Below, piece by piece: positions 38,450-61,412 of a DNA stretch of 64,000 nucleotides. A model generated the notes under the pieces. That model ran no database searches. It was given only the letters and a program-made list of their open reading frames with translations, and was not told the DNA's origin. Location of the stretch: the NCBI GenBank assembly GCA_002269645.1, contig NIVC01000359.1, forward strand, positions 1 to 64,000, given 5' to 3'. The translations under genes were made by a program, and so were the position numbers. Position 1 is the first letter of the stretch. Each line of letters begins with the position of its first letter. Origin of the DNA: Macrostomum lignano. Lineage: Eukaryota.

Positions 38450-41400
38450 ATGCTGCTTTTACTCTACCATTTAACGGCTGCTTTGCTGTGGCTCATAGGT
38501 GAGTGTTTTGACATTCGATTTTACCTGACTCTATTTACAGTGTTTTTACCTTGCGCCACCTTCGAGAGTAGATCGTTACAATTATGGCGACAGGTGGCCG
38601 AATTTTCAATGGTGTCAACTGAGTCTGTAAAGTTAAAAAATATCTACTTTGTACGTTAGCTTCTTACACAGTGCAAAATGTTATTTTAGTCTCACATAAT
38701 CGCCCTCGAGCTACCGCCGAAGATGCAGTTATCTGCGGCAACATTTTTTAATTGGCGACATCAACAACCAGCATAATGAGGCATTTCTATCATTTCCATT
38801 GAGTCCTGAGCACATAGTAGCCAATACGAGCTACTGTACGCTTACTATGTTATTTTGACGATCAAGTATTAATGTTGTGAACTTGGTGCCGTCCTCCTGG
38901 ACAGCGAGTTGGATGTTATGTCAAGTCTCTTAGTTCCCACAGGGAAAACTAAAACATCGTATACAGGAAGCGACACACGTTTCATGGAAAAAGGTTTTGA
39001 AGGCCACTTTACACCGAAAAATACACTACGTAGATACGAAGTTTTCATTTTTTCAACACAAAAATTGTTATTGCTTTTGAAAGGAGGCTGACCCAATGTT
39101 CATCTCTTTGATATGTTGTGCTTTTCTAATAGCTCTATTGATATTCATAAAGCTTTTCGTTTAGAAAATTAGAATTCTATGTTTCCTGTACCTAAAAATC
39201 ATTAAATACATGGCACAGCTCGAGTATGTGGTTTTATGAATCTATTTTATCCATCTCTGCTGTAAACACATATTGTTACACAGCTAAGAATGACAAAATA
39301 GATTCATAAAACCAATGAGCTGGCCGTGCCATTTTAAAGGTTTTTAGGCACAGGACATATGCAATTGTACGTAGGATAAGAAATTAACATAGAATTCTAA
39401 TTTTCTGAACAAAAAGCTTTATGAATATCGATAGAGCTATAAGAAAGGCACAGCATATCAAGAGATGAGCACTGGATCTGCCTCCTATCCAAAGCAACAA
39501 CGATTTTTGTGCTGAAAAAATGAAAACTTCGTATCTACGTAGTGTATTTTCGGTGTAAAGTGGCCTTTAAAACCTTTTTCCATAAATTTCGGGCGCTGCT
39601 TCCTTCTACTTTAGTAGTCCTTGAGTTCCTAAACTTAAGTTTCACTTCGGTGATTTACCTGCAGATTTCCAGTCTTCGGCCAATGCGATGCCGCCAGTGA
39701 ACGGTGCCACAGTGTGCTCAGGCTCTGAGTGGACCTACATGCCGGTGTCTGGCAAGTGCTACCAACGTCTCGGCAGCGTCTACGCTCCCGTCGGCCGAGA
39801 GACCGCGCGGCAACGATGCGCCACCGCTGGCGGCAGTCTGGCCAGAGTGGACGGAGATGCGAACGTATTCGACCTGTCGGCCTACTGCATGGCGGTGCTG
39901 TTCACCGGGGCGAGCATCTGGGCCGACGCGGTTGTGTCGCCCAAGAACGGTCGGTTGCTGCATGAGCGTTGTACCTTTTTGTCTAAACTGTAATGCGTGC
40001 AATGGATCTTTGCGTGAGTTTTCGTATGTCATTTGAATGCGTCCGAGAAAGTTCTTTCAAGTCTAATTCTGCCTCATGGATTCGATGATTGTTTTGGATT
40101 TCAGTGCCCTCTTTCAGTACAGTATAAGACTTAATGCTGCCACCCTCTGCAGACAGCGAATGGATCTGGCAGGCTACCAGTGCCTCTGTGGACAGCAAGT
40201 TCTGGTCCCCCGGCGGTTTGCCAGCGAGCCCGGCCGGTCGGAACTGCAGCCGGCTGATCATCGATGTGAGCGTCGCGTCTGCTAGCGGCTACTGGGCGCC
40301 CAGCTCGGGCCTTCGAGCCGAGAGCTGCACCAACAATTTTACCGTGGTCTGCGAGAAGCCAGGTGCGCTTTCTAACTGAAATCTGCGACAATTACTCGTA
40401 CTACTGAAGAGTAGTAGAATGTTTGGGTTTCACAATATGCTCCCCCCTCACACCAACGTCCCCAGCCAGCACATGCTCCGTGTCCCAGATCCGCGGCCTC
40501 AACCCTCTGACGATGGTCATGTCGAACATCAGCTATGGCCTGCACCTCGAGAATGTGCCTCATCACGGGCTGCTGTCCGACATCCGCTGTCGGCCCGGCT
40601 TCTACAGGAACAGCGACAGGCCGTTAGCGAAGACTCCGGCGGCGACGCCCACACCGGAGGGCCTGCTGCCGCATCAAGCGTTCTGCTTGGCTAATGGCAC
40701 CTTTGCCTACGGATCGATTGAGCCCTGCTATCGTGAGGCTGGGTTGCTTGTGTCATAATAGTTGGTTTTATGCTCTCTACAATAATGGGAGGTGGTTGTA
40801 GCCTTGTGATTAGAGCATTGGACTCACGAGTGAAAGGTTGGGGGTTCGATTCTCGATCATGCTGGAACAGTTGGTGTCCTTGAGCAACACACTCAACTCT
40901 GCATTATACTTCAATTCATCCGGCTGTAAAATGGGTACCAGCATTAGCTGGGGTCATTGAGGGTGTGTTTGTGGCGACCCCCCCCCTCCAGTCCTTGGAA
41001 TGGAGGAAATGGACTCAAGTGCGCGCTGCTGTCACCTTCGCGCTTGATGTTTTGTTTTGTTTTTGTTTGACTTGAAATAAAGTCATTTTATTATTTCAGC
41101 GATTCGCTGCAACGCCACCATCCTGAAGTCGGACATGCGCATTCCGCACGTGATGCCGTACGCCGACACTCTGGTGCACGAATTCTACAACTACACGCAT
41201 CAGTTCAGCGTCAACTGCAAGAAAGGCTACGTGTCCTACAAGAACAGCAGTGTGATTACTGGCGAGATCGCCTGCGACCAGAGCTTCAGGGATCCAACGC
41301 AGGGAGAATGGAGCCCGCCAGACCTCAACACTTGCACCGGTGCGTTTGCAATCAAGTGCAAATCTAAATGGGTTTAGAATTTAGGTGGTAGAAATCAGCA

Positions 41401-44400
41401 AGGATAGAAGTTGATCCTGAGGCTCATCGTTTTGTAATGTAAGAGTCGACTTGTCATGCCTTAAGGTTGGCCCTCTTGGGCGCGAATCTTACCTAAGGCC
41501 ACAGATGCTAGAGTAACTAGATGGGCCACTCAGTATATTTGCGTGTAAGCTACTTTCAGTTCAGTAGTACAGAAGAATTCGAATGTATTTTTAAGCCAAA
41601 GCTCATTTATTGGCTCTTAATACCACCCCGCCTAAACCCTCGAACCGCGCCTTTCCCCACTATGCTCCTCGCCCCTTCAATTTTTATTGCTTTTCTCGGA
41701 ATTCCAAGCCAAAGCTGCCATGTATAACATTCCAGTGGACTGGCCAATCTACATTACTGCTGAACCAATTAGCAAGTTGTTTACGCCTGCAAGCTTGGGC
41801 TTCTAAACTTATCAAAGAAATTTCAGCTGCCTTTATTTTTATAAAATAGCTTATGTATTCTTCTTTGCTACTGAACTGAAAGTAGACAGGTGTTTTACCA
41901 AGTATTTATGCCTGAGTGGCCCATCTAGCTATTTTAGTATCCGTGGCCCCGACAAATTTCTGTGCAAGAACACCAAATTAACGTGGCTGCTCGCGCAATC
42001 GAACCCTGATACTTTTGGCGCGAGAGTCCAATTCTAGTGATCTCCTTGAGTCTTAGGGTTTGGGTGTCCCGGTTGTGGGTTGCTTTCACAAACGCGAAAC
42101 TTCACAACCGCTAAATCACCTACTTTCATAAACGCGAAACTTCACAACCGCTAAATCACCTACTTTCATAAACGCGAAATTTCACAACCGCTAAATCACC
42201 TACTTTCATAAACGCTAAACTTCACAACCGCTAAATCACCTACTTTCATAAACGCGAAACTTCACAACCGCTAAATCACCTACTTTCATAAACGCGAAAT
42301 TTCACAACCGCTAAATCACCTACTTTCATAAACGCGAAACTTCACAACCGCTAAATCACCTACTTTCATAAACGCAAAACTTCACAACCGCTAAATCACC
42401 TACTTTCATAAACGCAAAACTTCACAACCGCTAAATCACCTACTTTCATAAACGCAAAACTTCACAACCGCTAAATCACCTACTTTCATAAACGCGAAAC
42501 TTCACAAACGCGAAACTTCACAACCGCTAAATGTTATCTTAATACCATTTACACAACCGCTACTCAAAACTTTCACAACCGCTAAAAAGACTTCGTATAT
42601 GAAAGTAAGTGCAAAAAATTTCGCGTTTGTGAAACCCATCCTTGGGTGTCTGGGGGTTTAAGTGGCTTTCTCGAATGATCTCGAATTTGGTCCGTTGGTT
42701 ACATCTGGTCAGAAATAAAATAAAATGATCACCTTTGCTATATTTGAGTGCAACTCTCCAATCCAATCCAGCCGTGAAATGCGACGACATCAGCACTGTG
42801 ATCAGCAGCCAGGCGGCTCCGTACAAGGCGGAGAATCGCGACGACCAGAAGAGCTACGGCGAATTTCAACAGTCGAGTTTCCCCTTCTATCCAAACCTGG
42901 TGTCCGTCAAGTGCCGTCAAATTGGCTACTTCTTCGAGGACCGCCAGTTTGAGAAGCTGCTCCGTTGCGGCCTAGCCAATGGCAGCCTCATCAAGGCGCA
43001 GTGGTACGGAGCGCAGGGTACGGATCTGCAACGGCTCAAAACTCTGCAGTGCACGCGTGAGTGAGCACTGTTGTGTATGCGGCTTGCCCGCCGCCTACAG
43101 TTCTTGCGTTCTGATTGGCTGGTGGTTTTGGCCACGCTGCCTCAAAGTACAACAAGCACTCTGAGCACTTTCACTCCCTGCTAACTGTTACTTCTGAGCA
43201 CAGGTTTCGCATCTTGAAAGATTTCGAATCATAAAAACCCAAGCGCAATAAACGTCTTTCGCAGTCTGACACTCAAGGATAATCACGTACGTCCTCTTCT
43301 TTCCTTGCCGCAACAGCCGTCAGCTGCCTCTCAGACAGAATCATCCGTCGGACAGCTGACGCCGCGGCCATCGTGAAGAACGCCCAGTACAAAGCCAAAA
43401 CCACGGTGAAGTACGGAAATGGCACAGTGGCCATTGTGCCCGCAATCGAGGTCAACCTACCTGAGACTTACCCCTACGCCACTGAGATCAGCTTCACGTG
43501 CGAGAATGGCACCGAGACTGGCGTCGGAGAGCCGGCTCTGTTCTGCAAAGCCGATGGCCAGTGGAATACCAGCGATCTGCCCGAGTGCATTAGTGAGGAG
43601 CCAGCGTCTTACGCCTCATTCACTGGGACTTTTGTTTCTTAGAAAATAGTCAGAGGCGAACAGGAAGGACTTTTGTTTCTTAGAAAATAGTCAGAGGCAA
43701 ACAGGAAGGACTTTTGTTTCTTAGAAAATAGTCAGAGGCAAACAGGAAGGACTTTTGTTTCTTAGAAAATAGTTAGAGGCGAACAGGAAGGACTTTTGTT
43801 TCTTAGAAAATAGTTAGAGTCGAACAGGAAGGACTTTTGTTTCTTAGAAAATAGTTAGAGTCGAACAGGAAGGACTTTTGCTTCTTAGAAAATAGTCAGA
43901 GGCGAACAGGAAGGACTTTTGCTTCTTAGAAAATAGTTAGAGTCGAACAGGAAGGACTTTTGTTTCTTAGAAAATAGTTAGAGTCGAACAGGAAGGACTT
44001 TTGTTTCTTAGAAAATAGTTAGAGTCGAACAGGAAGGACTTTTGTTTCTTAGAAAATAGTCAGAGGCGAACAGGAAGGACTTTTGTTTCTTAGAAAATAG
44101 TCAGAGGCGAACAGGAAGGACTTTTGTTTCTTAGAAAATAGTTAGAGGCGAACAGGAAGGACTTTTGTTTCTTAGAAAATAGTTAGAGTCGAACAGGAAG
44201 GACTTTTGTTTCTTAGAAAATAGTTAGAGTCAAACAGGAAGGACTTTTGTTTCTTAGAAAATAGTTAGAGTCGAACAGGAAGGACTTTTGTTTCTTAGAA
44301 AATAGTTAGAGTCGAACAGGAAGGACTTTTGTTTCTTAGAAAATAGTTAGAGTCGAACAGGAAGGACTTTTGTTTCTTAGAAAATAGTTAGAGTCGAACA

Positions 44401-44954
44401 GGAAGGACTTTTGCTTCTTAGAAAATAGTCAGAGGCGAACAGGAAGGACTTTTGTTTCTTAGAAAATAGTCAGAGGCGAACAGGAAGGACTTTCGTTTCT
44501 TAGAAAATAGTTAGAGGCGAACAGGAAGGACTTTTGTTTCTTAGAAAATAGTTAGAATCGAACAGTGAGAAATAGCCAGTGCCAAGCTGGAAAGAGGGAA
44601 GCGCGAGGGCTCGCAGGAAGAGATGTGGCTTGGCTGTATTAAACAGAAAAAGGAGAGGGCAGACAGAATTAAAAGATAATAGACTATCAATTATGTTCAT
44701 CGATCGTGAATGCCTTAATGCAACCTGTAATATCAACAGAGAAGTCGGAGGCACTCCAACTACAAGGCAACCAGAAGCACTACGTGCCCCCGGCTAAGGA
44801 GGCAGGCAACGCTGGAAGCGTTGGCGCCGTAGTCATCATGATCGTGGTGGTGTTCTGCGTCCTTGTTGTGATTCTTGACTTATCCACGTTGTCTCGCGAT
44901 ATCAACCTGCTGAAGACCAACCTGCGACGGCTGAGGCACTTCAAGCGGCACTAG
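38450..44954 (+). CDS. Type I membrane protein: signal peptide, C-type lectin domain, four sushi/CCP-like modules, TM, short tail (608 aa)
   Basis: Exons 38450-38498, 39665-39949, 40153-40362, 40466-40732, 41100-41339, 42772-43056, 43317-43592, 44740-44954; all introns phase 1, GT-AG. CTLD signs (C..EW.Y..SGKCY, A...C...GGSL, IW, C....VVCEK); modules with C...C...C...G.W...C; TM VGAVVIMIVVVFCVLVVIL. Confidence 0.82.
38940..39623. mobile_element. 684-bp MITE of the same family as 13301-13755
   Basis: Long imperfect TIRs sharing CACAAAAATTGTTATTGCTTTTGA; TSD AGTTCCCA (38932-38939) / AGTTCCTA (39624-39631). Confidence 0.8.
40791..41005 (+). mobile_element. tRNA-derived SINE, family 1
   Basis: Aligns by eye over its length with 9214-9420; B box GGTTCGATTCTC. 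Confidence 0.8.
42088..42530. repeat. 40-bp minisatellite (TAAACGCGAAACTTCACAACCGCTAAATCACCTACTTTCA)n
   Basis: About 10-11 units in a lectin gene intron. Confidence 0.95.
43627..44562. repeat. 41-bp minisatellite (GGACTTTTGTTTCTTAGAAAATAGTTAGAGTCGAACAGGAA)n
   Basis: About 23 units in the last intron of the lectin gene. Confidence 0.95.
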
Positions 44955-44984
44955 CCATTGACTGGTCTTTCTGGTTGAAGGGTG

Positions 44985-45955
44985 GAGGGTTAAGAGGTGG
45001 TTGAGGTGTTTGAGGGGTGGTTGAGGGGTGTTTGAGGGGTGGTTGGGGGTGTTTGAGGGGTGGTTGGGTAGTTGAGGGGTGGTTGGGTGGTTGAGGGGTG
45101 TTTGAGGGGTGGTTGGGGGTGTTTGAGGGGTGGTTGGGGGTGTTTGAGGGCTGGTTTAGGTGTGTTTGAGGGCTGGTTGGGTGGTTGAGGTGTGTTTGAG
45201 GGGGTGGTTGGGTGGTTGAGGGGTTGAAGTGTGGTTGGGTGGTTGAGGGGTGGTTGAGGGGTGGTGGAGGGGTGTTTGAGGGGTGGTTGGGTGGTTGAGG
45301 TGTGTTTGAGGGGGTGGTTGAGGGGTTGAGGGGTTGAAGTGTGGCTGGGTGGTTGAGGGGTGGTTGAGGGGTGGTTGAGGGGTGTTTGAGGGCTGGTTGG
45401 GTGGTTGAGGTGTGTTTGAGAGGGTGGTTGGGTGGTTGAGGTGTGTTTGAGGGGGTGGTTGGGTGGTTGAGGGGTTGAAGTGTGGTTGGGTGGTTGAGGG
45501 GTGGTTGAGGGGTGGTGGAGGGGTGTTTGAGGGGTGGTTGGGTGGTTGAGGTGTGTTTGAGGGGGTGGTTGAGGGGTTGAGGGGTTGAAGTGTGGCTGGG
45601 TGGTTGAGGGGTGGTTGAGGGGTGTTTGAGGGCTGGTTGGGTGGTTGAGGTGTGTTTGAGGGGGTGGTTGAGGGGTTGAGGGGTTGAAGTGTGGTTGGGT
45701 GGTTGAGGGGTGGTTGAGGGGTGTTTGAGGGCTGGTTGGGTGGTTGAGGTGTGTTTGAGAGGGTGGTTGGGTGGTTGAGGGGTGGTTGAGCGAGTGGTTT
45801 AGGGGTGTTTGAGGGGGTGGTTGGGTGGTTGAGGGGTGTTTGAGGGGGTGGTTGGGAGGTTGAGGGGTGTTTGGAAGGTTGAGGGGTGGTCGAATGGTTG
45901 AGGGGTGTTTGAGGTGTGGTTCTGGGGTGGCTGACGGATGGTTTTAGGGATGGTT
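44985..45955. repeat. G/T-rich degenerate repeat (GGGGTGGTTGA / GGGGTGTTTGA)
   Basis: Dense G3-G5 runs directly after the lectin gene stop codon. Confidence 0.92.
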
Positions 45956-46437
45956 GAGAAAATTTTGCATGGTTTGAAAAGTTAGAATATTTTTGATGTG
46001 ATTCAATGCTGTGAGCTTTTACAAGTGTATCAAAAAACAAGGCCATAAAATTCTCGTACTGTCTACTGAGCTCTATCTCGCTGCTACTCTTCTTATTTAC
46101 TAACTATCAACAACGGCGATAAAATAATTTTTAATGGTTGAAATTTAAAACGGAGGACTTGATGATTGTTACTAAAATAATGGTTGGTAATAATAATTGT
46201 TACTAAATATAGCTTTCCTGCTCCAATTCTGAATCTGAAACTCTTGCAAAAATAAAGCAAATAAATCAAACCGGCTTTTTATTTCCATTTTTGTCACTGC
46301 CCCCACTGCTCGGGAGCCAGCAAATCGGCAGTGTTGGGCAAACGAGACCCGCCCCTTCGGTGGCGGCATTGCCTATAAGTATTTGTTTGCCGATGCAGCG
46401 CACAGCATCCACTCCGTCTTAGCAGTCCTGCGCTCTC

Positions 46438-47831
46438 ATGAAGACATCAGCTTGGCTAGCAGCTATGCTGCTGCTGCTGCTGCTGCAAGTCCTGACGGCT
46501 CACGGGCTGCAGCGGCGCTATTGGCTCAGCAGCGCCGTCCCACTTTCACTCAACCAGCGGCAGCTCCGCCATCGAATGCGGAAGTCGCTGCACTGAACGA
46601 AGCGGCTGCTTCGGCTTCGCCTTCGTCCGAGAGCTGTGCCGGCTGTTCGCATTCGACGCGTTCTTCGGCAGCTGGACGGTCTCGGAGCCGGACACCGCCG
46701 TCTTCACTCGGCCACTCAGTGAGTCTACCTGCGTACTATGGGGGGGGGGGGCTCAGAAACCTAAATGATAGGCTTTTAACTTCATAATACGAGCGTACCA
46801 ATACTTTATAAGCCTCTTAATACTAAAACTGGTGCGATGTTTGTCTGTATGTATGTGTGTTGCAATTTTTCTCCTAGACTACTGGCAAGTCAGCGTTGAA
46901 ACTTATATGGGAAAACTGCAAATAAATAAATAAGGGAGTAGGGGTAGAGATGAGACGAGAGAGAGGAGAGAGAAGAGAGTCACGATAATAGCGAAGAGGG
47001 GAGAGAGGAGATATGAGAGACGTGAGAGTCTTTGAGCTATGGTCTTTGAAAGGTTTTGTAAAGAATTTGGAGACGATTTGGAAGATAGGGTTCAAGAAAT
47101 GGAATTTCAGTTGATGGATACTTCAGGGAATAGAATTCTGGTGATGGGAGTTCTTCCCCTTTCTCCTCCGAAGGAGGAGTTCCACTCCTATTTCATAAAA
47201 ATCAAAACTAGTGGCTGCACAAGCCCTCAACTTAGCAAGACTTTAAAAGCATTGCTTTCAAAGATGTTTGTTTTAGGCCTTGTGAAACGCCTATAAAAGT
47301 GGATGCTAGTCTTTTTGGCATATGTAGAATTTACGGAATTTGTGAAAGCGCCCTTCCCAAATCCATCGCAGCCCGAATCAGGCCTCTAGTAGTTGTTCTG
47401 TTTTCCTGCTAACTTTAGAGATGGAGCGACTGCAGCTGCAAAACTGCTCGCAGTCCACACTGTACAAGAATGCATCGTGCTCCAATGCGATTGATGGCAA
47501 CACGGATCAAAACTTTAAAAACGGGTACTGCTGCATGCACACCGGCTGCGGGTCTGGTCGACAGGAATGGTGGACAGCCAGCCTCCCTGCTGCATCCTTT
47601 GTCTCGGACTTGATCATCTATAACCGGCTGGACAACAACCAGGCAAAGAGGTTAAACGTGTTCTCAATCCAGTTGGACGGAGTCACCTGCGTTGAAAGGA
47701 ACGAAACGTTTCCGTTTGCAATCGGCAATTTCAGCTGCAGCAGATTCGGCAGCCAGCTGACTGTCATCAATGACTTTGACCAGTGCCTCAGCATCTGCGA
47801 GATTCAGGTCTTCGGATTCAGCTATCCGTGA
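46438..47831 (+). CDS. Secreted PAN/apple + F-type lectin (F5/8C, fucolectin-like) protein with a 1-nt frameshift in exon 1; possible pseudogene or assembly error
   Basis: Signal peptide MKTSAWLAAMLLLLLLQVLTAHG from 46438. PAN motif SAIECGSRCTERSGCFGFAFVRELCRLF lies in the +1 frame. Donor after 46718; exon 47419-47831 encodes SQSTLY...SNAIDGNTD...HT...WW...IYNR...RL...LSICEIQVFG. Confidence 0.7.
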
Positions 47832-48852
47832 TCAATGAGTTCATAGCTACATCAGACAGAATAACAACTTGATGAACAGGTTTTCCCAATGCGCCACAGT
47901 CTGACATTAAGAAACCAACTGCATGCTCAGTTTCTGACAGATCCGAATTTCTTTATTGCAGAAACTATTCAAGTGACTAAACATCATTCCCTTCTGAACT
48001 GGTTTATAGGAAATGCTTTTTATTTAATTGTCATTCCAATTTGGGCAAAAATTCCCAGACGAATTCTTATGATCTCAACCGAGCTAACAAAAATCGAGGA
48101 TAACAAAATGTCACACTTCACAAAAGAATCAATGATTTCTACTGCAAATTATTTTTTTATTAACGCCAAAACAATTGAAAATTGACGGCAGACTAATTCA
48201 ACTTTTAATCAAGGCGGTTACCATCAAACGGTCCCTAATGCAGTCAATTTGCAAGACTGCTGCAGTTGGCTTTATCAGAGTGCCGCTAACTGGCTTTTAA
48301 TAAAATGAAGACTAAATTTACAATTTATTAGAATTAATTTGAAAGCCTCAATTTGCTTCAAAATTCGTCAACAAGATGGGAACCATCGAAACGCTTTGCT
48401 CAGTGAAATCATAAAATGAAATGGGTTTTCCCAACTGATAAATAATACTCGGACAGGAACAATGAGTCGGGAAAAATCCTTTTATAAAAAATAAACTGGA
48501 GAGATAGGAAGAGGCTTTAGTTGTGCTTGAATTTTCTCTGAAGTCGATACCTTGTTAAACAACGTCGTCGCAACGCAGGCACGCGAAATTTCAGAACTAC
48601 AATTTTTGTTTTGCGCCTTCCCAAACAGGAGTCAAGTCGCAGGACCTCCAGACAGACCGACGAGATATTCAACGATTCTGTCAGAAGGTTGAATTTTTTC
48701 TGTATGTGACTAGTGCATTCAGAAGATCCCTGTAGTCCTCGGACAGGGAGTCCAATTTCGCTGATCAAGCATAAACAATAAACAAACCTCAAATGATGGA
48801 CACGACAATGGACAGTCTGTCATCAATAGTAATAAGATCCGAGCCTCTAATC

Positions 48853-48957
48853 CAGGGGTCAGCCAACTCCGGCCACTGGCCACTCTATCCGGCGAAGCCT
48901 CTCTATCCGGCCCTCGGGTCCTTTGAAATTTTGCAATAGCAATCCGGCCCGCTCAAG
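48853..48957 (+). mobile_element. hAT/Charlie-like left end preceding a CT-rich array
   Basis: CAGGGGTCAGCCAACTCCGGCC...CTCTCTATCCGGCCCTC...AATAGCAATCCGGCC resembles the element at 1180; right end not identified. Confidence 0.5.
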
Positions 48958-48961
48958 GTTT

Positions 48962-49700
48962 GTGTCTCTTCTCAGCTCTCTTCTATCTTTTCTTCTCTAA
49001 TCTTCTCTATTCTTTCCCCTCTTCCCTCTCCCCTCTCCCCCTCTCTTCTCTCCCTCCTCTCCCCTCTCCCTTCTCTCCCCTCTCCCCTCTCCCCCCTCTC
49101 CCTCTCCCCCTCTCCCTCTCCCCCTCTCTTCTCTCCCTCCTCTCCCTCTCCCCCCTCTCCCCTCTCCCTTCTCTCCCCTCTCCCCTCTCCCCCCTCTCCC
49201 TCTCCCCCCTCTCCCCTCTCCCTCCTCTCCCTCCTCTCTTCTCTCCCTCCTCTCCCTCTCCCCTCTCCCCCCTCTCCCCCTCTCTTCTCTCCCTCCTCTC
49301 CCCTCTCCCTTCTCTCCCCTCTCCCCTCTCCCCCCTCTCCCCTCTCCCCCCTCTTCCTCCTCTCTTCTCTCCCTCCTCTCCCCTCTCCCCCCTCTCCCCT
49401 CCCCCCTCTCTTCTCTCCCTCCTCTCCCCTCTCCCCCTCTCCCCTCTCCCTTCTCTCCCCTCTCCCCTCTCCCCCCCTCTCCCCTCTCCCCCCTCTCCCC
49501 TCTCCCTCCTCTCCCTCCTCTCTTCTCTCCCTCCTCTCCCCTCTCCCCTCTCCCCCCTCTCCCCCCTCTCTTCTCTCCCTCCTCTCCCCTCTCCCTTCTC
49601 TCCCCTCTCCCCTCTCCCCCCTCTCCTCTCTCCTTCCTCTCCTCTCTCCCTCCTCTCCTTTCTCCCTCCTCTCTTTTCTCCCCTCTCTCCTCCCTCTTCT
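48962..49700. repeat. Polypyrimidine (CT-rich) low-complexity array
   Basis: Direct reading. Confidence 0.97.
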
Positions 49701-50014
49701 TCATTCAGATGTCTTCAGTCACCAGACGCTATTCCCAGCATTGAAGGTTGCCGTCTATTAAGGTCAATGCCGCTCTATGCTTGAAAAGCGAACAAGCAAT
49801 GATAAAATTATACACTGAGTCGAAGTAGGAGAGCAACTTTATTGCATTTGACCTACAGACTCAAAAGAAAGCAGTTGCTCGTGATGGTCATTGCGAAAAC
49901 AGAAAAAAACAACTTGCCGAAAAACGTGCCGAGTTTCTCTGCATAAATACGAGACCCCTGCGAGAGCAGAACTCAACCAACAGCAAACGAGATATCTCTT
50001 AGCTATCTCGTTAG

Positions 50015-50236
50015 GCCGTCGCCAGACCCAGCAGCAAGGAGATGTCGGAGGAGGACGCGGAGTCGATGGCGGCTCTGGAGGCTCTGGCCGACATGGACGA
50101 GCTGGAGATGACGGACGAGAAGGCCGCCGAGCTGCAGAAGAAGTGGCGCATCAGACTCCGCCGCATCAGGTGGAGGAAGGTGTACCGCTACGCCAGGGCC
50201 GCCTACAGGATCTACCGCCACCTGCACGGCAAGTAG
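50015..50236 (+). CDS. Candidate cationic antimicrobial peptide precursor (acidic propiece plus Arg-rich amphipathic peptide)
   Basis: GC-rich frame AVARPSSKE-MSEEDAESMAALEALADMDELEMTDEKAAELQKK-WRIRLRRIRWRKVYRYARAAYRIYRHLHGK*, opening after a TAG acceptor at 50014. Signal peptide unresolved. Confidence 0.6.
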   Translation, partial: AVARPSSKEMSEEDAESMAALEALADMDELEMTDEKAAELQKKWRIRLRRIRWRKVYRYARAAYRIYRHLHGK

Positions 50237-50919
50237 GCCGCAGGCGCTCCGCTGCACCCATTGATCTCTGACGCGGACCGGACTCCCCCCCCCCGACTTG
50301 ATTTCTTGCCTAACTGAAAATTTCGATTTTTCCATCATGCATGTTTTGACCCTAATTTTGAAAAGTATTTTGTCTAGACTTGAGTACACCATAATTATGA
50401 ATGATTGAAGTTTTAATTTTCAAATTATAACTCAGATTTTGGGACTGATCCAGCTAGTCAATAATTAATTTACACACGCGACTTTCTCTGACCTCATTCA
50501 TTAGAAGTAGTATCTAATAGTTTATTTGTAATGTACAAATACATGTAATCACGGCATTTTGCGTATGTTTTCTCGGCCAATGCGTGCAGTACATTTAAAT
50601 CGCATGAGAAGAACGTCCCAGGCCAATTTTTGGTGCACGATCGATCCGAAAATGGCCCCAGGCACGAGAGTCTGAAGCAATTGGTACACATACACGTACT
50701 GCAACGCAAATTAAATATGCCCCCTGCAAGTCTAGCTGCATGACTCGACTCGAGTGTTGAAGTAAGATTCCATTGATTTGGTTTGATTTTAATGAAAGCT
50801 AGCTGTATTTTACCAGTACCTTGTACCTATGCCAAATTATGATTACCTACGCCAGATAGAAAAAAGTCCAATTCTCGCTTGCTTGGCTTGGCGTTCTAGA
50901 AAATGTTTAATTAGGATGG

Positions 50920-56390: not shown

Positions 56391-57432
56391 TAAAAGTGAA
56401 GAAAAATTATTAAAATAATTTATTGTAGCAAACAAGAACTATGCTGATTTTTTCTCTATTTTACTTTTTTAGTCTTATATTATGGGACCACTATAGGCTA
56501 TAATAAATGATGAAATTGATTTCATACCTATCAATAAACCATTTTTTGTCGTATTAACAAAAAATTTACTTAATAACAATAAATTTACTTAAAAATTCTT
56601 TTTAGTTAAAATATATATTTGAATTTATTGGTAGGTATTAAAGAATTGCCAGTTTTTTAAAGCACAAAGTACATAAATTTTAAAAAAATTATCTATTATA
56701 AAAAATCCATAAATTTAGTTTTCATTTCTTCTTCTATAAATAGCCGAGCTGCTGAACAACTAGAAGTTTATTGTTATTAGTAGTTGATTTGCAATATAAA
56801 GGCTTTGTTATATTTAAATTTCAATCGAAGCATAAATGTATACCATATATTAATATACACATGTAAGGCTCATATATTATTGTATTATAGTCTTCTATTG
56901 TATAACTAACCCCTTGCCATAATGCATGGCTATTGCCATGAACAAAAACTTACATCTGTTAGAAAAAATCACATCAGCATTGAAGCTTATTTTAATATTT
57001 TTTACCTGGTTAATTCAATACTTAAATACAATTCTAAAATTATTTTACTGTTATTTTTATTGCACCTGCAGCTCCGCCAACTCAGTAGCCACCTGTGCAG
57101 CACCCAGCACTGGTCCCAAGCCGAGGCAGAAGCTGGCCAAGAGGCGCAGTGCCATCATCTCAATAACAGCAAGCGCCAGCAACAGCAGCTATTGCCGCAG
57201 CAGCAGCCTCAGAAGCAGCCGCAGCAGCAAAAGCAACTAGAAGCAGCAACATGCATACTGCCTGTTAACCTAGCAGCTGTCGAATTTTCGACAGACCGCC
57301 AATATTTTGGCAGCAAGCCAAAGTTCGCGGAACAGCAACTCGAACAGAAGAGTATTAATCAACATCGAATATTAATCCGACGAATTCTGCTCTATTATCA
57401 TTATCTGCTTTCGGAAGCAGCAATTAACAACA

Positions 57433-59217
57433 ATGACAGATTGTGTGGATACCGCCGCTGCCACAGAAGCGGCCGCCGAGCACGAATCCGCAGGCTGGTT
57501 CGGCGCCTGCCCGCCCGAGCTGCTGCTTCGAATCCTGGGCCGCCTGGACCTGCTCTCCCTGCTGCGCCTTGGCAACACCTGCCGGCTGCTCCAGCGCCAC
57601 TGCCGCGACCCCCTGCTGTACACGGAGCTCCGGCTTCGCCCGCACTCCATCCGGGTGTGCGACGCCAGCCTGTCTGTGCTGGAGCATCGCACCGGCTGCC
57701 TGACTGGACTTGACATGTCCTGGTGCGGCACTGACGGCGCCATCAGCCCCGGCTCCTTCTGCCGCCTGTTGCTAGGCACCTGTTTGCTCACCGATTTGCG
57801 TTTGGCCAATTGTAAATTTCTTGACGACGCCTGCCTAGCCGCTATCGGGTCGCACTGTCGCTCTCTGACTGGTAAGCTTTTTGTGAAGCTGTTTTGCTTT
57901 TGATGCGTTCTGCTTTAAGTAGATAAGAAGGAAAGTAAGTAGGCTTGTGGCCAAGTTGGTTGGGTTTTAAACCGAAATATTCGCTGCTATAACCCTAGAA
58001 AATCAATATTTAAAAGTGGGTTACGGCGCGAGTAACTATTTATGTATTTAAATAGTGCGATGCCTCGCCATCTTATTAGTTTCTGCAATCACTCCGTTTA
58101 TCCCCCACCCAGATTTGGATCTCTCGGGCTGCGCCTCGCCGGCCACCGAGTCCGGCTTCGCCTCTCTGTCTGTCGGCCTCACTCGCCTTGAACGACTCGA
58201 CCTGAGCCGCTCCGGTGTTGGCCAGGCCGCCCTGCTCGATATTATCGCTGCTAATCCTGGCCTACTGCGTCTCCGCCTGAGCTCCTGCGCTCGCGTAGCC
58301 GACTTCAATCCGGTGGCCGAGGCGCTGGCCCGCCATTGTCCGAATCTGCGATCCGTGGACTTCTGGCGCAGCGGCAGTTTAAGCAGCCGCGGACTCCTGC
58401 AGCTGGCCGAGGGCTGCGCTATGCTGGAGGAGCTCGACCTGGGCTGGTGCTCCCGGGTGGAGTCCAGCTCCGGCTGCTTCCTGCGCCTCGCCAGCCAGTG
58501 CTGCAATCTGCGCAAGCTTTTTCTCACCGCTAATAGGTCAGTCTTGCTGAACTGCGTCTCTGTTAGTTTCTCCTTTGTTTTTATCTACCCTTCTCTCCCC
58601 AGATCTCACCCTACCCGCCCTTATTCTCTCCCCAGATCTCACCCTACCCGCCCTTATTCTCTCCCCAAATCTCATCCTACCCGCCCTTATTCTCTCCCCA
58701 AATCTCACCCTACCCGCCCCTTTTCTCTCCCCAGATCTCACCCTACCCGCCCTTATTCTCTCCCCAAATCTCACCCTACCCGCCCCTTTTCTCTCCCCAG
58801 ATCTCACCCTACCCGCCCTTATTCTCTCCCCAAATCTCACCCTACCCGCCCTTATTCTCTCCCTAAATCTCACCCTACCCGCCCCTTTTCTCTCCCCAGA
58901 TCTCACCCTACCCGCCCTTATTCTCTCCCCAGATCTCAGCCATCCGCCCTACTCTCCGCAGAACGGTATGCGACACGGACCTGAAGGCCATAGCCCTGCA
59001 CTGCAAGCAGCTGCAGCAGCTGGACATTCTCGGCACCAACCAGGTGACATTCAACATCCTGATCGAGGTGCTGCAGTCCTGCCCGAAGCTGGAGCTGTTC
59101 GACGTCAGTTTCTGCGCGGGCATCAACAAGGACAAGGTGCACCAGATGCGGCATTCGTTTCCGCACTGCTCAATCCAGATGAGCTTTCAGGCCGAGAGCT
59201 GCATGGTTCGGGCCTAG
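57433..59217 (+). CDS. FBXL4: F-box/LRR protein 4 ortholog, 372 aa, 3 exons (57433-57871, 58113-58536, 58962-59217)
   Basis: GWFGACPPELLLRIL...CRDPLLY, LDMSWCG..G.IS, LEELDLGWC....SSSGCF.RLA, LRKLFLTANR.VCDTD, LQQLDILGT, LFDVSFC and a terminal I.MSF, all colinear with FBXL4 as remembered. Confidence 0.9.
58591..58935. repeat. 33-bp minisatellite (CTCTCCCCAGATCTCACCCTACCCGCCCTTATT)n, FBXL4 intron 2
   Basis: About 10 units. Confidence 0.95.
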
Positions 59218-60309
59218 GGTTTTGGGGGCCGATTCAGTGTATCTGGTGTAGGGACAAATTTGCCCATTTGATATAAACAAATTAGTTTTTAAAAAGTAAA
59301 AAATGGTAAGTAGAATTCGAATACTTTCCAGGCGTCTTGAACAATAACATTTTTCCTTGTTTATCCAGTTTGAAATACGAGCTACAAGACAGAATATACA
59401 CTTAATGCTCAATAATGGTTTATACTACAAAAAGAATTAAAATTCACACAGCCTACTTGCTCTGTGAAATCTCTCAGTAGTTCCTGACGGCTATGCCTAA
59501 TTAATGTTTTCTTCAAGATGAGGATAGCTACTAGTTAAAAACATAATTAGTATGCAAAAAGGCAATATTGAGCGTTCTGAGTATATTCTGTTGGATATAA
59601 AATTCTCATTGTAAAGGCGTGTTTCCACAAGTAGCAACTGATGACTGATGACTTTATCAGCGGATAAACTGGCTATATATAGATGCGCATTATTTTCCCC
59701 CTAATATATATGTTTTTTGTTTGAAATTTAGTTCTAACAACATCAAACTCTTCTCGGTAGAAATGTTTGCATAGCCATTACAAAACATAGATAACTTGAT
59801 TAACCTTTTTGTGTTTTATTACACAATTAGCAACCCTCTAGTGGTACACAAGATAAATAAACAAATTTCATCAAGGCTTTTTTTCTTCTGTTCCTATAGT
59901 TTAACACCTTTCTTGGTTCCAACAGTTTTTGTCATTTCTATCTTATAGTTACTACGATATAGTTTATGTAGTTGCAAAAGGGACGGATACAGACGCAAAA
60001 AGTGCATTTTTATCTTTTAAAAGAATCTGAGAAATTTTTTGGACACAAATCACAGCTCATGGTGATAAAAATTTCGAATAGAATAATAGAGCAAAGTATT
60101 TTGAGTACAGGAACAGAGGAATGCTTGTTCAATGTTGAAAATGTTCACAATCTGTGCATAACATCGTAAAAACATTGAGAAAATGTGCAGACAAAGTAAA
60201 TTTGATCAACCTGTTTCGCCTTGGGATTTCTTATAAAAGTATCCGTTGTTACTACAGAGCAAAATTTTTTTTTTCCATTGTAAGAGTTCCCGGTAAATTG
60301 GGCGTTTAG

Positions 60310-61412
60310 GGAGGCTTAGACTAAGACGGGCTCTTTATTGAGGCTTAGACAGGCTCTTCAGGGAGGCCTAGACAGGTTCTTCAATGAGGCTTAGACAGGC
60401 TCTTCAGGGAGGCCTAGACAGGTTCTTCAATGAGGCTTAGACAGGCTCTTCAGGGAGGCCTAGACAGGTTCTTCAATGAGGCTTAGACAGGCTCTTCAGG
60501 GAGGCCTAGACAGGTTCTTCAATGAGGCTTAGACAGGCTCTTCAGGGAGGCCTAGACAGGTTCTTCAAGGAGGCTTAGACAGGCTCTTCAATGAGGCTTA
60601 GACAGGCTCTTCAATGAGGCTAGACAGGCTCTTCAATGAGGCTTAGACAGGCTCTTCAATGAGGCTTAGACAGGCTCTTCAATGAGGCTTAGACAGGCTC
60701 TTCAATGAGGCTTAGACAGGCTCTTCAAGGAGGCTTAAACAGGCTCTTCAAGGAGGCTTAGACAGGCTCTTCAATGAGGCTTAGACAGGCTCTTCAATGA
60801 GGCTTAGACAGGCTCTTCAATGAGGCTTAGACAGGCTCTTCAATGAGGCTTAGACAGGCTCTTCAATGAGGCTTAGACTAAGACGGGCTCTTTATTGAGG
60901 CTTAGACAGGCTCTTCAGGGAGGCCTAGACAGGTTCTTCAATGAGGCTTAGACAGGCTCTTCAATGAGGCTTAGACAGGCTCTTCAATGAGGCTTAGACA
61001 GGCTCTTCAATGAGGCTTAGACAGGCTCTTCAATGAGGCTTGGACAGGCTCTTCAAGGAGGCTTAGACAGGCTCTTCAAGGAGGCTTAGACAGGCTCTTC
61101 AAGGAGGCTTAGACAGGCTCTTCAAGGAGGCTTAGACAGGCTCTTCAATGAGGCTTAGACAGGCTCTTCAAGGAGGCTTAGACAGGCTCTTCAAGGAGGC
61201 TTAGACAGGCTCTTCAATGAGGCTTAGACAGGCTCTTCAATGAGGCTTAGACAGGCTCTTCAATGAGGCTTAGACAGGCTCTTCAAGGAGGCTTAGACAG
61301 GCTCTTCAATGAGGCTTAGACAGGCTCTTCAAGGAGGCTTAGACAGGCTCTTCAATGAGGCTTAGACAGGCTCTTCAAGGAGGCTTAGACAGGCTCTTCG
61401 GGAGGCTTAGAC
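60310..61412. repeat. 23-bp minisatellite (AGGCTTAGACAGGCTCTTCAATG)n between FBXL4 and BBS1
   Basis: About 47 units, with alternating 46-bp higher-order pairs at the 5' end. Confidence 0.95.

What the first reader, a model, noticed from the sequence alone, without database searches (positions are those of the whole stretch)
49940..50236. Candidate new antimicrobial peptide: charge-balanced propiece, dibasic site and amidation signal
Seen: a 34-aa segment with 12 D/E residues ends in KK and is followed by WRIRLRRIRWRKVYRYARAAYRIYRHLHGK* (30 aa, 10 R + 2 K, no acidic residues, rich in W/Y/I). Established: an acidic propiece, dibasic cleavage and C-terminal G-K amidation signal are hallmarks of cationic host-defence peptide precursors. 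The 5' end is odd: TATA-like CATAAATA at 49942, then ACG-AGA-TAT-CTC-TTA-GCT-ATC-TCG-TTA (RYLLAISL, 49987) one base out of frame with AVA-RP. This could be a decayed signal peptide, a missing upstream exon, or an assembly error.
Basis: partly seen in the sequence, partly recalled or inferred. Interest (0 to 1): 0.7.

Follow-up and report, generated by a model that had tools for sequence, protein, structure and literature searches.

The report
Leaderless copy of flatworm defence-peptide gene
The sequence is a real member of a previously undescribed, Macrostomum-only gene family that encodes secreted precursors of arginine-rich, probably antimicrobial peptides, but this particular copy has lost its start codon and signal peptide through a 74-base deletion and is most likely a dead or at least non-secreted relic.

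Summary
The ORF at 50042-50236 (+) encodes a 34-aa acidic block ending in KK, then a 28-aa Arg-rich peptide, then G-K-stop. A TATA box sits at 49942. This charge pattern occurs nowhere else in the window.

The window is Macrostomum lignano (flatworm). The ORF belongs to a clustered multigene family of single-exon genes found only in Macrostomum (8 hits among 1.84 billion representative proteins). Intact paralogues encode a signal peptide (MRWQFVLGLLLCAALAAA|RP), a conserved acidic propiece, KK, a variable cationic amphipathic peptide of 8-34 aa, and G-K or G-K-R. The architecture resembles frog dermaseptin/temporin precursors and Hydra arminins, without sequence homology to either.

The odd 5' end is a deletion. 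Paralogues have 82-83 nt where the window has 9 nt. The loss removes the ATG and 15 of 18 signal-peptide codons. Eight of the 9 filler bases are an inverted copy of the adjacent 5'UTR, which points to a repair scar rather than an assembly error.

A UniProt model (A0A1I8JEL3) attaches this exon to an upstream Sushi/PAN/F5-8C gene, but it looks over-merged.

A 2023 helminth AMP screen flagged two relatives computationally and then filtered them out. Nothing has been tested experimentally. Verdict: new member of a known kind; this copy is probably a pseudogene.

The parts
49762..50004 (+). Promoter and 5'UTR block homologous to the paralogues (about 81-90 % nt identity)
   Evidence: blastn of the window against M. 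lignano loci. All hits break at 50009/50014. Alignments A1 and A3.
49919..49949 (+). Family core promoter GAAAAACGTG-N14-ATAAATA. The TATA box CATAAATA is at 49942-49949. The window has C where six paralogues have G immediately 5' of the motif.
   Evidence: One match in the window against 0 expected. Present at the same position in the paralogues of L001-L005 and aligned in L006.
49976..50004 (+). Remnant of the 5'UTR. The transcript start is predicted near 49972-49977, about 30 nt after the TATA box.
   Evidence: The transcript-derived, 5'-partial model P0002 starts at the equivalent of window 49976 (PTANEISLS). The GenBank models are RNA-seq based. No ATG lies between 49966 and 50041.
50005..50013 (+). 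Deletion junction. The 9-nt filler ATCTCGTTA replaces 82-83 nt of 5'UTR + ATG + 15 signal-peptide codons. Eight of the nine nt are the reverse complement of AACGAGAT at 49986-49993.
   Evidence: Anchored comparison with 6 paralogue copies. Inverted repeat I1. Alignments.
50015..50023 (+). Last three signal-peptide codons (A-V-A), i.e. the AxA signal-peptidase site remnant, preceded by an in-frame TAG at 50012-50014
   Evidence: Aligns with ...AAA|RP and ...AVA|RP of the intact paralogues.
50024..50143 (+). Acidic propiece RPSSKEMSEEDAESMAALEALADMDELEMTDEKAAELQKK (40 aa, 13 D/E, net -8). The KK processing site is at 50138-50143.
   Evidence: K57 and K58 are invariant. Pooled dN/dS 0.28 and 84 % aa identity among copies.
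50042..50236 (+). The only complete ORF left: 64 aa from the internal Met, with no signal peptide
   Evidence: The Met is shared with paralogues as an internal residue (...KEMSEED...).
50144..50227 (+). Predicted mature peptide WRIRLRRIRWRKVYRYARAAYRIYRHLH (28 aa, +11, 2 His). It has an alternating Arg/hydrophobic N-terminal part and an amphipathic C-terminal 18-mer.
   Evidence: Maximum 18-mer hydrophobic moment 0.84, p=0.023 against shuffles. The homologous segment of P0001 is predicted helical at pLDDT about 80.
50228..50236 (+). Gly-Lys-stop: Gly is the amide donor and Lys is removed by a carboxypeptidase (inferred)
   Evidence: G88 and K89 are invariant in the subfamily (GK or GKR) while the preceding residues vary: HLH, LPI, IIC, FP, PL, LL.
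50237..50304 (+). 3'UTR block conserved with the paralogues
   Evidence: blastn hits reach 50290-50304. Alignments A1 and A3.
47397..47831 (+). Last exon of the upstream gene (F5/8-type-C domain). It ends ...EIQVFGFSYP and then TGA at 47829-47831. It is not part of the peptide gene, but the database model P0006 joins it to 50026.
   Evidence: The donor cc|GTGATC at 47828-47829 overlaps the natural stop codon.

Best explanation
The locus is one copy of a Macrostomum-restricted, clustered, single-exon gene family. Each gene has its own TATA promoter.

**What intact members encode.** Intact members encode small prepropeptides.
1. An 18-aa signal peptide (MRWQFVLGLLLCAALAAA|RP) directs the product into the secretory pathway.
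2. A conserved helical acidic propiece (net -8 to -9) neutralises the cationic tail.
3. A proprotein convertase cuts after the invariant KK.
4. A carboxypeptidase removes the terminal K or KR.
5. Peptidylglycine alpha-amidating monooxygenase converts the terminal Gly into a C-terminal amide.

The product is an 18-34-aa peptide of charge +6 to +16, rich in Arg, Trp, Tyr and Ile. It is amphipathic and helical. It most likely acts as a membrane-active host-defence (antimicrobial) peptide, functionally like Hydra arminins and frog dermaseptins/temporins.

**What happened to the window copy.** An 82-83-nt stretch holding the end of the 5'UTR, the ATG and 15 of 18 signal-peptide codons was replaced by a 9-nt filler, a net loss of 74 nt. 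The filler is templated, which is an end-joining repair scar. Anything translated would start at Met-50042 and stay in the cytosol, unprocessed. This copy is therefore most likely a young pseudogene in a birth-and-death family.

**Shown here:** the homology, the signal peptide in paralogues, the deletion and its scar, promoter conservation, the invariant KK and GK, and constraint on the reading frame.
**Inferred:** every processing step, the helical membrane-active mode of action, and antimicrobial function.

**How sure, by component:** family membership with a deleted signal peptide about 0.95; secreted, KK-processed, amidated products in intact members about 0.7; antimicrobial function about 0.55; window copy non-functional about 0.75.
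For: **Family membership**
- E-values of 1e-19 to 1e-55 to M. lignano hypothetical proteins.
- Only 8 hits at E<=0.001 among 1.84 billion representative proteins: seven traced (the six looked up plus P0002) are M. lignano, P0007 comes from an SRA-run contig (SRR31628392) of unknown organism, and the weakest hit (P0012, E=2.8e-4) is a repetitive protein unlike the family, whose source was not looked up.

**Architecture of intact copies**
- Sequences.
- SP = Y for two members in the SignalP-based table of PMC10414684.
- AF2 predicts helices at 3-17, 26-41 and 49-84.

**Gene organisation**
- No intron, and a conserved promoter.
- A 27-kb cluster holds at least 7 copies: 3 intact and 4 decayed.
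- The paralogue models are RNA-seq derived.

**The deletion**.

**History as a coding gene**
- Window versus paralogues: omega 0.15-0.91 in the propiece and 0.38-1.30 in the mature part.
- All three indels against the closest copy are in frame: +3, -6, -6.

**AMP-like evolution**
- Propiece 84 % aa identity and omega 0.28. Mature peptide 65 % and omega 0.58, with length varying from 8 to 34 aa.
- Amphipathicity: maximum 18-mer moment 0.73-0.97 in the five long subfamily peptides and 0.66 in the 18-aa P0004 peptide, p 0.008-0.1.

**Independent AMP predictions on relatives**: 11/11 and 9/11 tools.

**Analogous architectures on record**: dermaseptin superfamily (PMC3742671); Hydra AMPs and arminin (PMC10945409 and PMC6217004).
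Against: - No peptide of this family has been isolated or assayed. Tissue of expression and inducibility are unknown.
- Omega stays below 1 in the mature region, so diversifying selection is not demonstrated.
- The mature region contains internal RR/RK pairs that convertases could also cut, so the real peptide boundaries are uncertain.
- A more distant branch (P0013/14) has EK instead of KK and no terminal Gly, and P0007 ends in SKK. The amidation signal therefore holds in the window's subfamily, not in the whole family.
- For the pseudogene call: the remaining 73 codons carry no stop or frameshift, the TATA promoter is intact, and the first AUG of the predicted transcript opens the 64-aa ORF. 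A leaderless product is not excluded.
- I could not confirm the deletion in an independent assembly or in reads.
Confidence: 0.6

Rival explanations
1. The peptide-coding stretch is the last exon of the upstream Sushi/PAN/F5-8C gene, as in the UniProt model A0A1I8JEL3 (P0006). The cationic peptide would then be a C-terminal tail of a larger lectin-like protein: exon capture after loss of its own start codon.
For: - P0006 (634 aa) ends with 69 residues identical to the window and maps to 40533-50233 in 9 tblastn segments (about eight exons, the first split by a frameshift).
- A GT at 47828 and an AG at 50024-50025 give an in-frame junction.
- With its own ATG lost, the exon is free to be captured.
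Against: - The donor cc|GTGATC is weak and overlaps the natural TGA, which follows directly after the end of the F5/8-type-C domain (...EIQVFGFSYP*).
- The 2.2-kb 'intron' would contain a 750-bp CT microsatellite and the peptide gene's own conserved TATA promoter and 5'UTR.
- The same AG acceptor sequence exists in all stand-alone paralogues.
- The model places extracellular-type domains on both sides of a TM helix (Sushi-TM-PAN-F5/8C), which is typical of merged genes.
- Its accession range and the ML2 'maker-...-snap' gene IDs in PMC10414684 S5 suggest an ab initio (MAKER) prediction on the ML2 assembly; that is my inference. The paralogues are transcript-supported stand-alone genes.
Confidence: 0.06
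2. The family is real and secreted, but the peptides are not antimicrobial. They could be signalling peptides (neuropeptide or hormone), reproductive or seminal-fluid factors, or deterrent or toxin-like secretions.
For: - Signal peptide, dibasic site and amidation signal are equally the hallmarks of neuropeptide precursors, and amidated neuropeptides are known from Macrostomum (PMC3503879).
- Rapidly evolving, lineage-restricted secreted peptides are also typical of reproductive proteins.
- No functional data exist.
Against: - Neuropeptide families conserve the amidated C-terminus and usually diverge in the spacer. Here it is the reverse: the propiece is conserved (84 %), while the mature peptide varies in length (8-34 aa) and C-terminus (HLH, LPI, IIC, FP, PL, LL, IRL, VHI).
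- A charge of +10 to +16, with Arg/Trp/Tyr content and amphipathicity, is extreme for a receptor ligand and typical of membrane-active peptides.
- One member has a Pro/Arg-rich (PRVRL)n tail like PR-type AMPs.
- 9-11 of 11 AMP predictors call the relatives AMPs.
- The tandem clusters with many decayed copies match the Hydra AMP families.
Confidence: 0.25
3. The leaderless copy is still functional. It would be transcribed from its intact TATA promoter and translated from Met-50042 into a 64-aa cytosolic protein in which the acidic half masks the basic half, giving a new intracellular role.
For: - The promoter motif and TATA box are retained.
- There is no upstream ATG in the predicted leader, and the purine at -3 is acceptable.
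- The ORF is free of stops and frameshifts, and all indels are in frame.
Against: - The invariant G 5' of the promoter motif is mutated to C in this copy only.
- The exact 64-aa product is on record nowhere in the gene-position index.
- It is absent from the transcript-based GenBank annotation retrieved here.
- Intactness of only 73 codons is expected for a young pseudogene.
- 4 of the 7 or more copies in the M. lignano cluster are decayed, and the window copy is another, so decay is the family norm.
Confidence: 0.1
4. The deletion is an assembly artefact, and the real locus carries an intact signal peptide.
For: - M. lignano assemblies are repeat-rich, redundant and built from error-prone long reads.
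- One paralogue (P0002) differs by a 1-nt indel that could be such an error.
- The locus could not be checked in a second assembly.
Against: - Long-read errors are 1-2-nt indels, not an 83-nt loss.
- The junction carries an 8-nt inverted copy of sequence 12 nt upstream. That is a templated insertion typical of end-joining repair, and an assembler would not invent it.
- The flanks on both sides align colinearly with the paralogues.
Confidence: 0.07

Closest known systems
Unnamed M. lignano 'hypothetical proteins' BOX15_Mlig030644g1, Mlig001477g4, Mlig025003g1 and Mlig001660g1 (closest); Mlig024774g1-3, Mlig026085g1/2, Mlig010792g3, Mlig020420g1 and Mlig015087g2 (distant branch)
   Same: True homologues with 65-83 % aa identity. 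They share the promoter, 5'UTR, propiece, KK, cationic tail, G-K(R) and 3'UTR.
   Different: They keep the ATG and signal peptide, which the window copy has lost to an 83-nt deletion. The mature peptides differ in length and sequence.
fAMP-LP-142 and entry 544 of Irvine et al. 2023 (PLoS Pathog, PMC10414684, S5 File)
   Same: These are members of this same family (Mlig024774g1/g2 and Mlig001477g4). They were computationally called AMP-like by 11/11 and 9/11 predictors.
   Different: They were listed only in a supplement and filtered out as 'Same genome' or 'Ungrouped'. The peptides were cut at every dibasic pair (FRWRKAIRIAGKVAKAVL, VVRTAYRIYRHLPFPGK). They were not recognised as one family, not discussed and not tested. 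The window copy is not in that table.
Hydra arminins (arminin 1a-C, KPWRFRRAIRRVRWRKVAPYIPFVVKTVGKK-NH2)
   Same: - Signal peptide, anionic N-terminal half and a highly cationic C-terminal peptide of about 30 aa that is amidated.
- Genus-restricted, clustered paralogues.
- Even an R(I/V)RWRKV heptad is shared.
   Different: There is no detectable homology: BLASTP E=2.8, and no arminin appears in the profile search. Arminin's antibacterial activity is reported in the literature (PMC6217004); here nothing is tested.
Frog-skin dermaseptin superfamily and temporin precursors
   Same: Same module order: signal peptide, 24-26-aa acidic propiece ending in a dibasic pair, a single C-terminal mature peptide, and a Gly amide donor. 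The prepro region is conserved while the mature peptide is variable (PMC3742671).
   Different: They are unrelated in sequence. The processing pair is KK, not KR. The signal peptide ends A-x-A, not in Cys. The mature peptides here are far more Arg-rich (+10 to +16 against +1 to +4). The genes are single-exon.
Flatworm AMPs described so far (mesco-2 of Mesocestoides corti; fAMP-LP-5 of Taenia; SmDLP; trematode HDMs)
   Same: Linear cationic helical peptides from secreted precursors of Platyhelminthes, found by genome mining.
   Different: There is no sequence relationship, and all of those come from parasites. None has the conserved acidic propiece/KK/GK layout or a tandem gene cluster as seen here.

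Membership tests
Macrostomum MRWQFVLGLLLC-type prepropeptide family (unnamed) | Significant sequence homology across the propiece and the cationic tail | tested here: met
   E=1.2e-19 and 3e-14 with the single sequence. Profile hits of 1e-28 to 1e-55 and 4e-43 to 3e-5.
Macrostomum MRWQFVLGLLLC-type prepropeptide family (unnamed) | Own core promoter GAAAAACGTG-N14-ATAAATA and an intron-less gene | tested here: met
   The motif is at 49919-49949 and in the paralogues of L001-L005. Colinear DNA alignments show no intron.
Macrostomum MRWQFVLGLLLC-type prepropeptide family (unnamed) | N-terminal signal peptide M[RK][WY]Q[FLI][VA]LGLLLC..A.A | tested here: not met
   Deleted in the window copy. Only A-V-A remains, behind an in-frame TAG. 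No substitute exon exists in the window. The copy is therefore a truncated or decayed member.
Macrostomum MRWQFVLGLLLC-type prepropeptide family (unnamed) | Invariant KK before the cationic peptide, and C-terminal G-K(R) | tested here: met
   K57, K58, G88 and K89 are invariant in alignment A4. In the window, KK is at 50138-50143 and GK at 50228-50233.
Gene-encoded cationic antimicrobial (host-defence) peptides in general | Direct antimicrobial or membrane-permeabilising activity of the mature peptide | not testable with these tools
   Only proxies are available: charge +11, a hydrophobic moment of 0.84 in the C-terminal 18-mer, a predicted helix, and third-party predictor scores on relatives.
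Gene-encoded cationic antimicrobial (host-defence) peptides in general | Secretion and proteolytic release from a charge-neutralising precursor | tested here: inconclusive
   The architecture is present in the paralogues. Processing has not been observed. The window copy lacks the signal peptide.
Dermaseptin superfamily (Anura) | Homologous, conserved preproregion (22-aa signal peptide ending in Cys, acidic propiece ending in KR) | tested here: not met
   No frog precursor appears among all hits of the exhaustive profile search. The signal peptide ends A-x-A and the processing pair is KK. The signature is taken from PMC3742671.
Hydra arminins | Sequence homology to arminin precursors | tested here: not met
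   BLASTP of the mature peptides gives E=2.8. There is no cnidarian hit.
Neuropeptide/prohormone precursors of flatworms | A conserved amidated C-terminal motif across paralogues and species, with the peptide more conserved than the spacer | tested here: not met
   The C-termini vary (HLH, LPI, IIC, FP, PL, LL). The mature part shows 65 % identity against 84 % for the propiece. No homologue is found outside Macrostomum.
Cathelicidins | Cathelin-like proregion (Pfam Cathelicidins) | tested here: not met
   No Pfam family is found for the window ORF or the paralogues at E<=1 to 10.
Terminal exon of the Sushi/PAN/F5-8C gene (model A0A1I8JEL3) | A credible splice junction 47827|50026 and a coherent domain architecture | tested here: inconclusive
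   GT and AG are present, but the donor is weak and overlaps the natural stop codon. The intron would contain the family promoter. The architecture is implausible. RNA evidence is not available here.

The most novel reading that the evidence does not exclude
The leaderless copy is not dead. One possibility is that it has been captured as the C-terminal exon of the upstream PAN/F5-8C lectin-like gene, as the database model proposes, which would fuse a carbohydrate-recognition module to a cationic killing peptide. The other is that it is expressed from its own promoter as a cytosolic 64-aa self-neutralised acid/base helical hairpin with a new intracellular role. Either case would catch a secreted defence-peptide gene in the act of being repurposed.
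Probability: 0.08. Interest if true: 0.65.

Novelty: new member of a known kind. Interest (0 to 1): 0.45.

Why it matters
Free-living flatworms are almost blank on the antimicrobial-peptide map. A 2025 review states that flatworm AMP research is at an early stage and that canonical families are missing.

This family gives Macrostomum lignano a concrete candidate effector family. M. lignano is a regeneration model with working transgenesis and annotated promoters. The family offers:
- a conserved 250-bp promoter that could drive a reporter;
- a conserved propiece suited to pan-family RNAi;
- a natural series of 8-34-aa Arg-rich amidated peptides, including a Pro/Arg-repeat variant, for structure-activity work.

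The family also parallels the genus-restricted, clustered arminins of Hydra, which in that animal shape the microbiome. That adds a second, independent case of convergent acidic-propiece/cationic-tail design in an early-branching bilaterian lineage.

The window copy itself documents how such families turn over. Here the cause was a single end-joining deletion. Elsewhere in the family the causes were minisatellite invasion, a frameshift and loss of the start codon.

It also shows two annotation problems. Single-genome filters in AMP screens discard lineage-specific families. Ab initio models (A0A1I8JEL3) and even transcript-based ones (Mlig001477g4) can fuse such small genes to their neighbours.

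Tried and rejected
- **Pfam.** Nothing found for the window ORF, both overlapping alternative ORFs (126 aa in another frame, 129 aa antisense) or three paralogues.
- **PDB sequence searches.** The profile and the mature peptide gave only E>1 noise.
- **Upstream signal-peptide exon in the window.** tblastn with MRWQFVLGLLLCAALAAARP gave a best E of 0.62, downstream and unconvincing. Rejected.
- **'RYLLAISL' as a decayed signal peptide.** Rejected. It is the conserved 5'UTR plus the palindromic filler.
- **Transposable-element origin of the ~540-bp unit.** There are no terminal inverted or direct repeats beyond short chance matches. Homology covers exactly promoter to 3'UTR. Rejected in favour of gene duplication.
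- **Synteny or allele search.**
  - Flanks of the window do not align with any of the five M. lignano loci beyond the gene unit and dispersed repeats.
  - The BBS1 neighbour found only a 50 %-identical mollusc protein, so no syntenic contig could be fetched.
- **Exact-product look-ups.** The 64-aa ORF and the antisense ORF spanning the junction are not on record. There is therefore no independent confirmation of the junction and no RNA contig.
- **Homology to arminin.** Rejected.
- **Positive selection on the mature peptide.** Not shown: pooled omega is 0.58, below 1, from few short and non-independent pairs.
- **Literature.** Six searches aimed at the family, by locus tags, peptide strings and topic, found no description of it apart from the supplement of PMC10414684.
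Full report
**1. What is in the sequence**

The window is eukaryotic: it has CT microsatellites and GC-rich coding islands in AT-rich DNA. The finding's coordinates hold a complete ORF at 50042-50236 (+), 64 aa: MSEEDAESMAALEALADMDELEMTDEKAAELQKK-WRIRLRRIRWRKVYRYARAAYRIYRHLH-GK*.

The acidic-then-basic pattern occurs at this one site among 21,466 windows of 64 aa in all six frames. No Pfam family matches the ORF or the two overlapping alternative ORFs.

**2. It belongs to a gene family of the flatworm Macrostomum lignano**

- A search of 5.8 billion proteins returned only two M. lignano hypothetical proteins. A profile search added two more.
- An exhaustive HMM scan of 1.84 billion cluster representatives found 8 hits at E<=0.001. 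Seven traced (the six looked up plus P0002) are M. lignano, P0007 comes from a genomic contig of an SRA run of unknown organism, and the weakest hit (P0012, E=2.8e-4) is a repetitive protein unlike the family whose source was not looked up.
- One of the hits, UniProt A0A1I8JEL3, ends with 69 residues identical to the window. This identifies the window as M. lignano.

Intact members read, for example:
- MRWQFVLGLLLCAALAAA|RPNSQENSQEDAEAMAALEALADMDEPEMTDEKAAELQKK|WLLRRIRIRWRRVLRVASRVYRIYRYLPI-GK (P0001)
- ...KK|FRIRIRWGRVARNVLRLL-GK (P0004)
- ...KK|WRVRLRRIRIRWRRVYRVARRVYRAYRKYRRIIC-GKR (L005 18340)

More distant members keep the signal peptide and acidic propiece but carry quite different tails: a (PRVRL)n Pro/Arg repeat, FVRVRARIRL-G, IFRVRVHI-G, and a two-Cys peptide.

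**3. Gene organisation**

DNA alignments show single-exon genes. About 250 bp of promoter and 5'UTR and about 70 bp of 3'UTR are conserved. The motif GAAAAACGTG-N14-ATAAATA occurs once in the window (0 expected), at the same position in the paralogues of L001-L005, and is aligned in the SRA contig L006.

The 5'-partial, transcript-derived model P0002 starts at the equivalent of window 49976, about 30 nt after the TATA box. The GenBank BOX15_Mlig models come from a genome-guided RNA-seq transcriptome (PMC5730564). The paralogues are therefore expressed genes.

One 27-kb stretch of contig NIVC01001664.1 holds at least seven copies in both orientations. Three are intact. One has ATG changed to TTG plus a stop and a frameshift. 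One has a 1-nt deletion in the signal peptide. Two are promoter+MRWQFVLGL stubs cut off by a (GGCACAGACA)n minisatellite. This is birth-and-death evolution.

**4. The odd 5' end is a deletion**

Between the anchors GATATCTCTYAGCT and GGCCRYCGCCAG, six paralogue copies have 82-83 nt: the rest of the 5'UTR, the ATG and 15 signal-peptide codons. The window has 9 nt, ATCTCGTTA. All blastn hits break at 50009/50014.

Eight of the nine filler bases are the reverse complement of AACGAGAT, which lies 12 nt upstream. That is a templated insertion of the kind left by end-joining repair. It argues for a real mutation rather than an assembly error (my inference). It also explains the palindromic 'RYLLAISL' string.

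What remains of the signal peptide is A-V-A|R-P (50015-50029), behind a stop codon. tblastn finds no substitute signal-peptide exon anywhere in the window.

**5. The 'larger protein' model**

A0A1I8JEL3 (634 aa) maps to 40533-50233 in 9 tblastn segments (about eight exons, the first split by a frameshift). Its last junction uses a donor cc|GTGATC at 47828-47829. That donor overlaps the natural TGA (47829-47831), which directly follows the end of the F5/8-type-C domain (...EIQVFGFSYP*). The acceptor is at 50024-50025.

Several points count against the model:
- The 2.2-kb 'intron' would contain a 750-bp CT microsatellite and the peptide gene's own promoter.
- The architecture Sushi-TM-PAN-F5/8C-peptide places extracellular-type domains on both sides of a membrane helix.
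- Its accession range and the ML2 'maker-...-snap' gene IDs seen in PMC10414684 S5 suggest an ab initio (MAKER) prediction on the older ML2 assembly; that is my inference.

I judge it an over-merged model, but only RNA data can settle this.

**6. How the family most likely works**

Shown:
- The n/h/c signal-peptide layout with A-x-A. SP = Y for two members in a SignalP-based table.
- A propiece net charge of -8 to -9.
- Invariant K-K, and invariant terminal G-K(R) next to variable residues.
- AF2 on a 5-sequence alignment (mean pLDDT 67) gives three helices. The third (residues 49-84, pLDDT about 80) runs through KK and the whole cationic peptide.
- The C-terminal 18-mers have hydrophobic moments of 0.73-0.97 in the five long subfamily peptides and 0.66 in the 18-aa P0004 peptide, p 0.008-0.1 against shuffles. 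The N-terminal part alternates Arg with W/I/L.
- Pooled Nei-Gojobori estimates give omega 0.28 for the propiece and 0.58 for the mature part. Amino-acid identity is 84 % against 65 %. Mature length ranges from 8 to 34 aa.

Inferred from established knowledge of secretory peptide processing:
- signal peptidase cleavage after A-x-A;
- convertase cleavage after KK;
- carboxypeptidase trimming of K or KR;
- amidation by PAM with Gly as the donor;
- membrane-active killing.

The pattern of a conserved prepro region and a variable cationic payload is that of host-defence peptides. It is the opposite of neuropeptide precursors.

**7. Status of the window copy**

Against its closest paralogues, its divergence is that of a coding sequence: omega 0.15-0.23 in the propiece and 0.38-0.64 in the mature part. 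All indels are in frame (+3, -6, -6). The deletion is therefore probably recent.

Without a signal peptide the product cannot reach the compartments where KK cleavage and amidation occur. The predicted transcript would have Met-50042 as its first AUG, so a leaderless 64-aa product is conceivable. Three points argue against expression:
- The G that is invariant just 5' of the promoter motif is a C in this copy only.
- The product is not on record in the gene-position index.
- The copy is not among the transcript-based GenBank proteins retrieved.

**8. Comparison with what is known**

- *Dermaseptin superfamily.* The architecture matches: a 22-aa signal peptide, a 24-26-aa acidic propiece ending in KR, a single C-terminal peptide and a Gly amide donor (PMC3742671).
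- *Hydra AMPs.* They share the bipartite charge, clustered paralogues and genus restriction (PMC10945409). Arminin 1a-C (+13, amidated) even shares R(I/V)RWRKV (PMC6217004).
- *Homology.* None is detectable to either group or to anything in the PDB.

*Prior art.* The supplement of Irvine et al. 2023 (PMC10414684) lists Mlig024774g1/g2 (fAMP-LP-142, 11/11 predictors) and Mlig001477g4 (entry 544, 9/11 predictors). Both were removed because the pipeline discarded ungrouped peptides and groups from a single genome assembly. They were not treated as one family, not discussed and not tested. No paper in the library prints these sequences or locus tags. Reviews describe free-living flatworm AMPs as largely unexplored.

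**9. Verdict**

The window holds a signal-peptide-deleted, probably non-functional member of a new, Macrostomum-restricted family of candidate amidated cationic host-defence peptides.
- Novelty: new member of a known kind.
- Interest is moderate. The family is a good and very testable lead in a tractable model. The design is a familiar one, activity is unproven, and relatives were already flagged computationally.

Noticed in passing
window 6638-12583 vs 20649-25938: A segmental duplication at 99-100 % identity, seen in three sampled 300-nt blocks with offsets of 14011, 12848 and 13355 nt. The two copies therefore differ by internal indels, probably in their minisatellites.
   Followed up: no
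window 5878-8700, 10138-11400, 13810-15180, 17758-18900, 21306-22230, 26539-27700, 43503-44700, 60196-61400: Very dense minisatellite arrays with periods of 8, 15, 23, 24, 37 and 41 nt, each 0.7-1.5 kb long. Many of the long 'ORFs' in the window are just translations of these arrays.
   Followed up: partly
window 48960-49700: A ~750-bp CT-rich microsatellite lies directly upstream of the peptide gene's promoter block. It produces the spurious 274-aa and 235-aa ORFs on the two strands.
   Followed up: no
window 40533-47831 (+): Upstream gene or genes with Sushi, a TM helix, PAN and F5/8-type-C domains. UniProt model A0A1I8JEL3 merges them, and the peptide exon, into one 634-aa protein. Extracellular-type domains on both sides of the TM helix suggest at least two genes.
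   Followed up: partly
window 57376-58981 (+); 61998-63629 (-); 15426-16046 and 27844-28560 (+): Ordinary metazoan neighbours: an F-box/LRR gene and BBS1 (BBSome subunit 1) exons. Two further LRR-like ORFs (…[17 protein letters not shown]…) lie in or near the duplicated blocks. BBS1's best database hit was only 50 % identical (the mollusc Mya arenaria), so the M. lignano orthologue seems absent from the searched protein set.
   Followed up: partly
window 49918 (and L001-L006 promoters): The family promoter motif reads GGAAAAACGTG in six paralogues but CGAAAAACGTG in the window copy. The factor that binds this invariant element about 14 nt upstream of the TATA box is unknown.
   Followed up: no
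L003 ~1258 and ~2900 (= L005 ~33-35 kb): Two family copies keep the promoter, 5'UTR and MRWQFVLGL and then run straight into a (GGCACAGACA)n minisatellite of more than 300 nt. This is gene destruction by minisatellite invasion, and the event was itself duplicated.
   Followed up: partly
L005 10001-37330: GenBank model BOX15_Mlig001477g4 (P0003, 139 aa) joins the first 31 codons of one family copy to a complete second copy 27 kb away. It includes translated 5'UTR (YLSASQLHQATQLNQAS), so it is a fused transcript model rather than a real protein.
   Followed up: partly
L006 541-813 (Logan contig SRR31628392_42504): A family member whose tail is a Pro/Arg repeat, FLRVRLPRVRMPRVRLPRVRLPRLRVRFRWSKK. 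It resembles PR-type antimicrobial peptides and has no Gly amide donor. The organism of the run could not be determined here.
   Followed up: no
window 4319-4933: A dispersed repeat 97.8 % identical to L005 8483-8944, in inverted orientation. It is consistent with the window and the Mlig_3_7 contigs being the same species.
   Followed up: no
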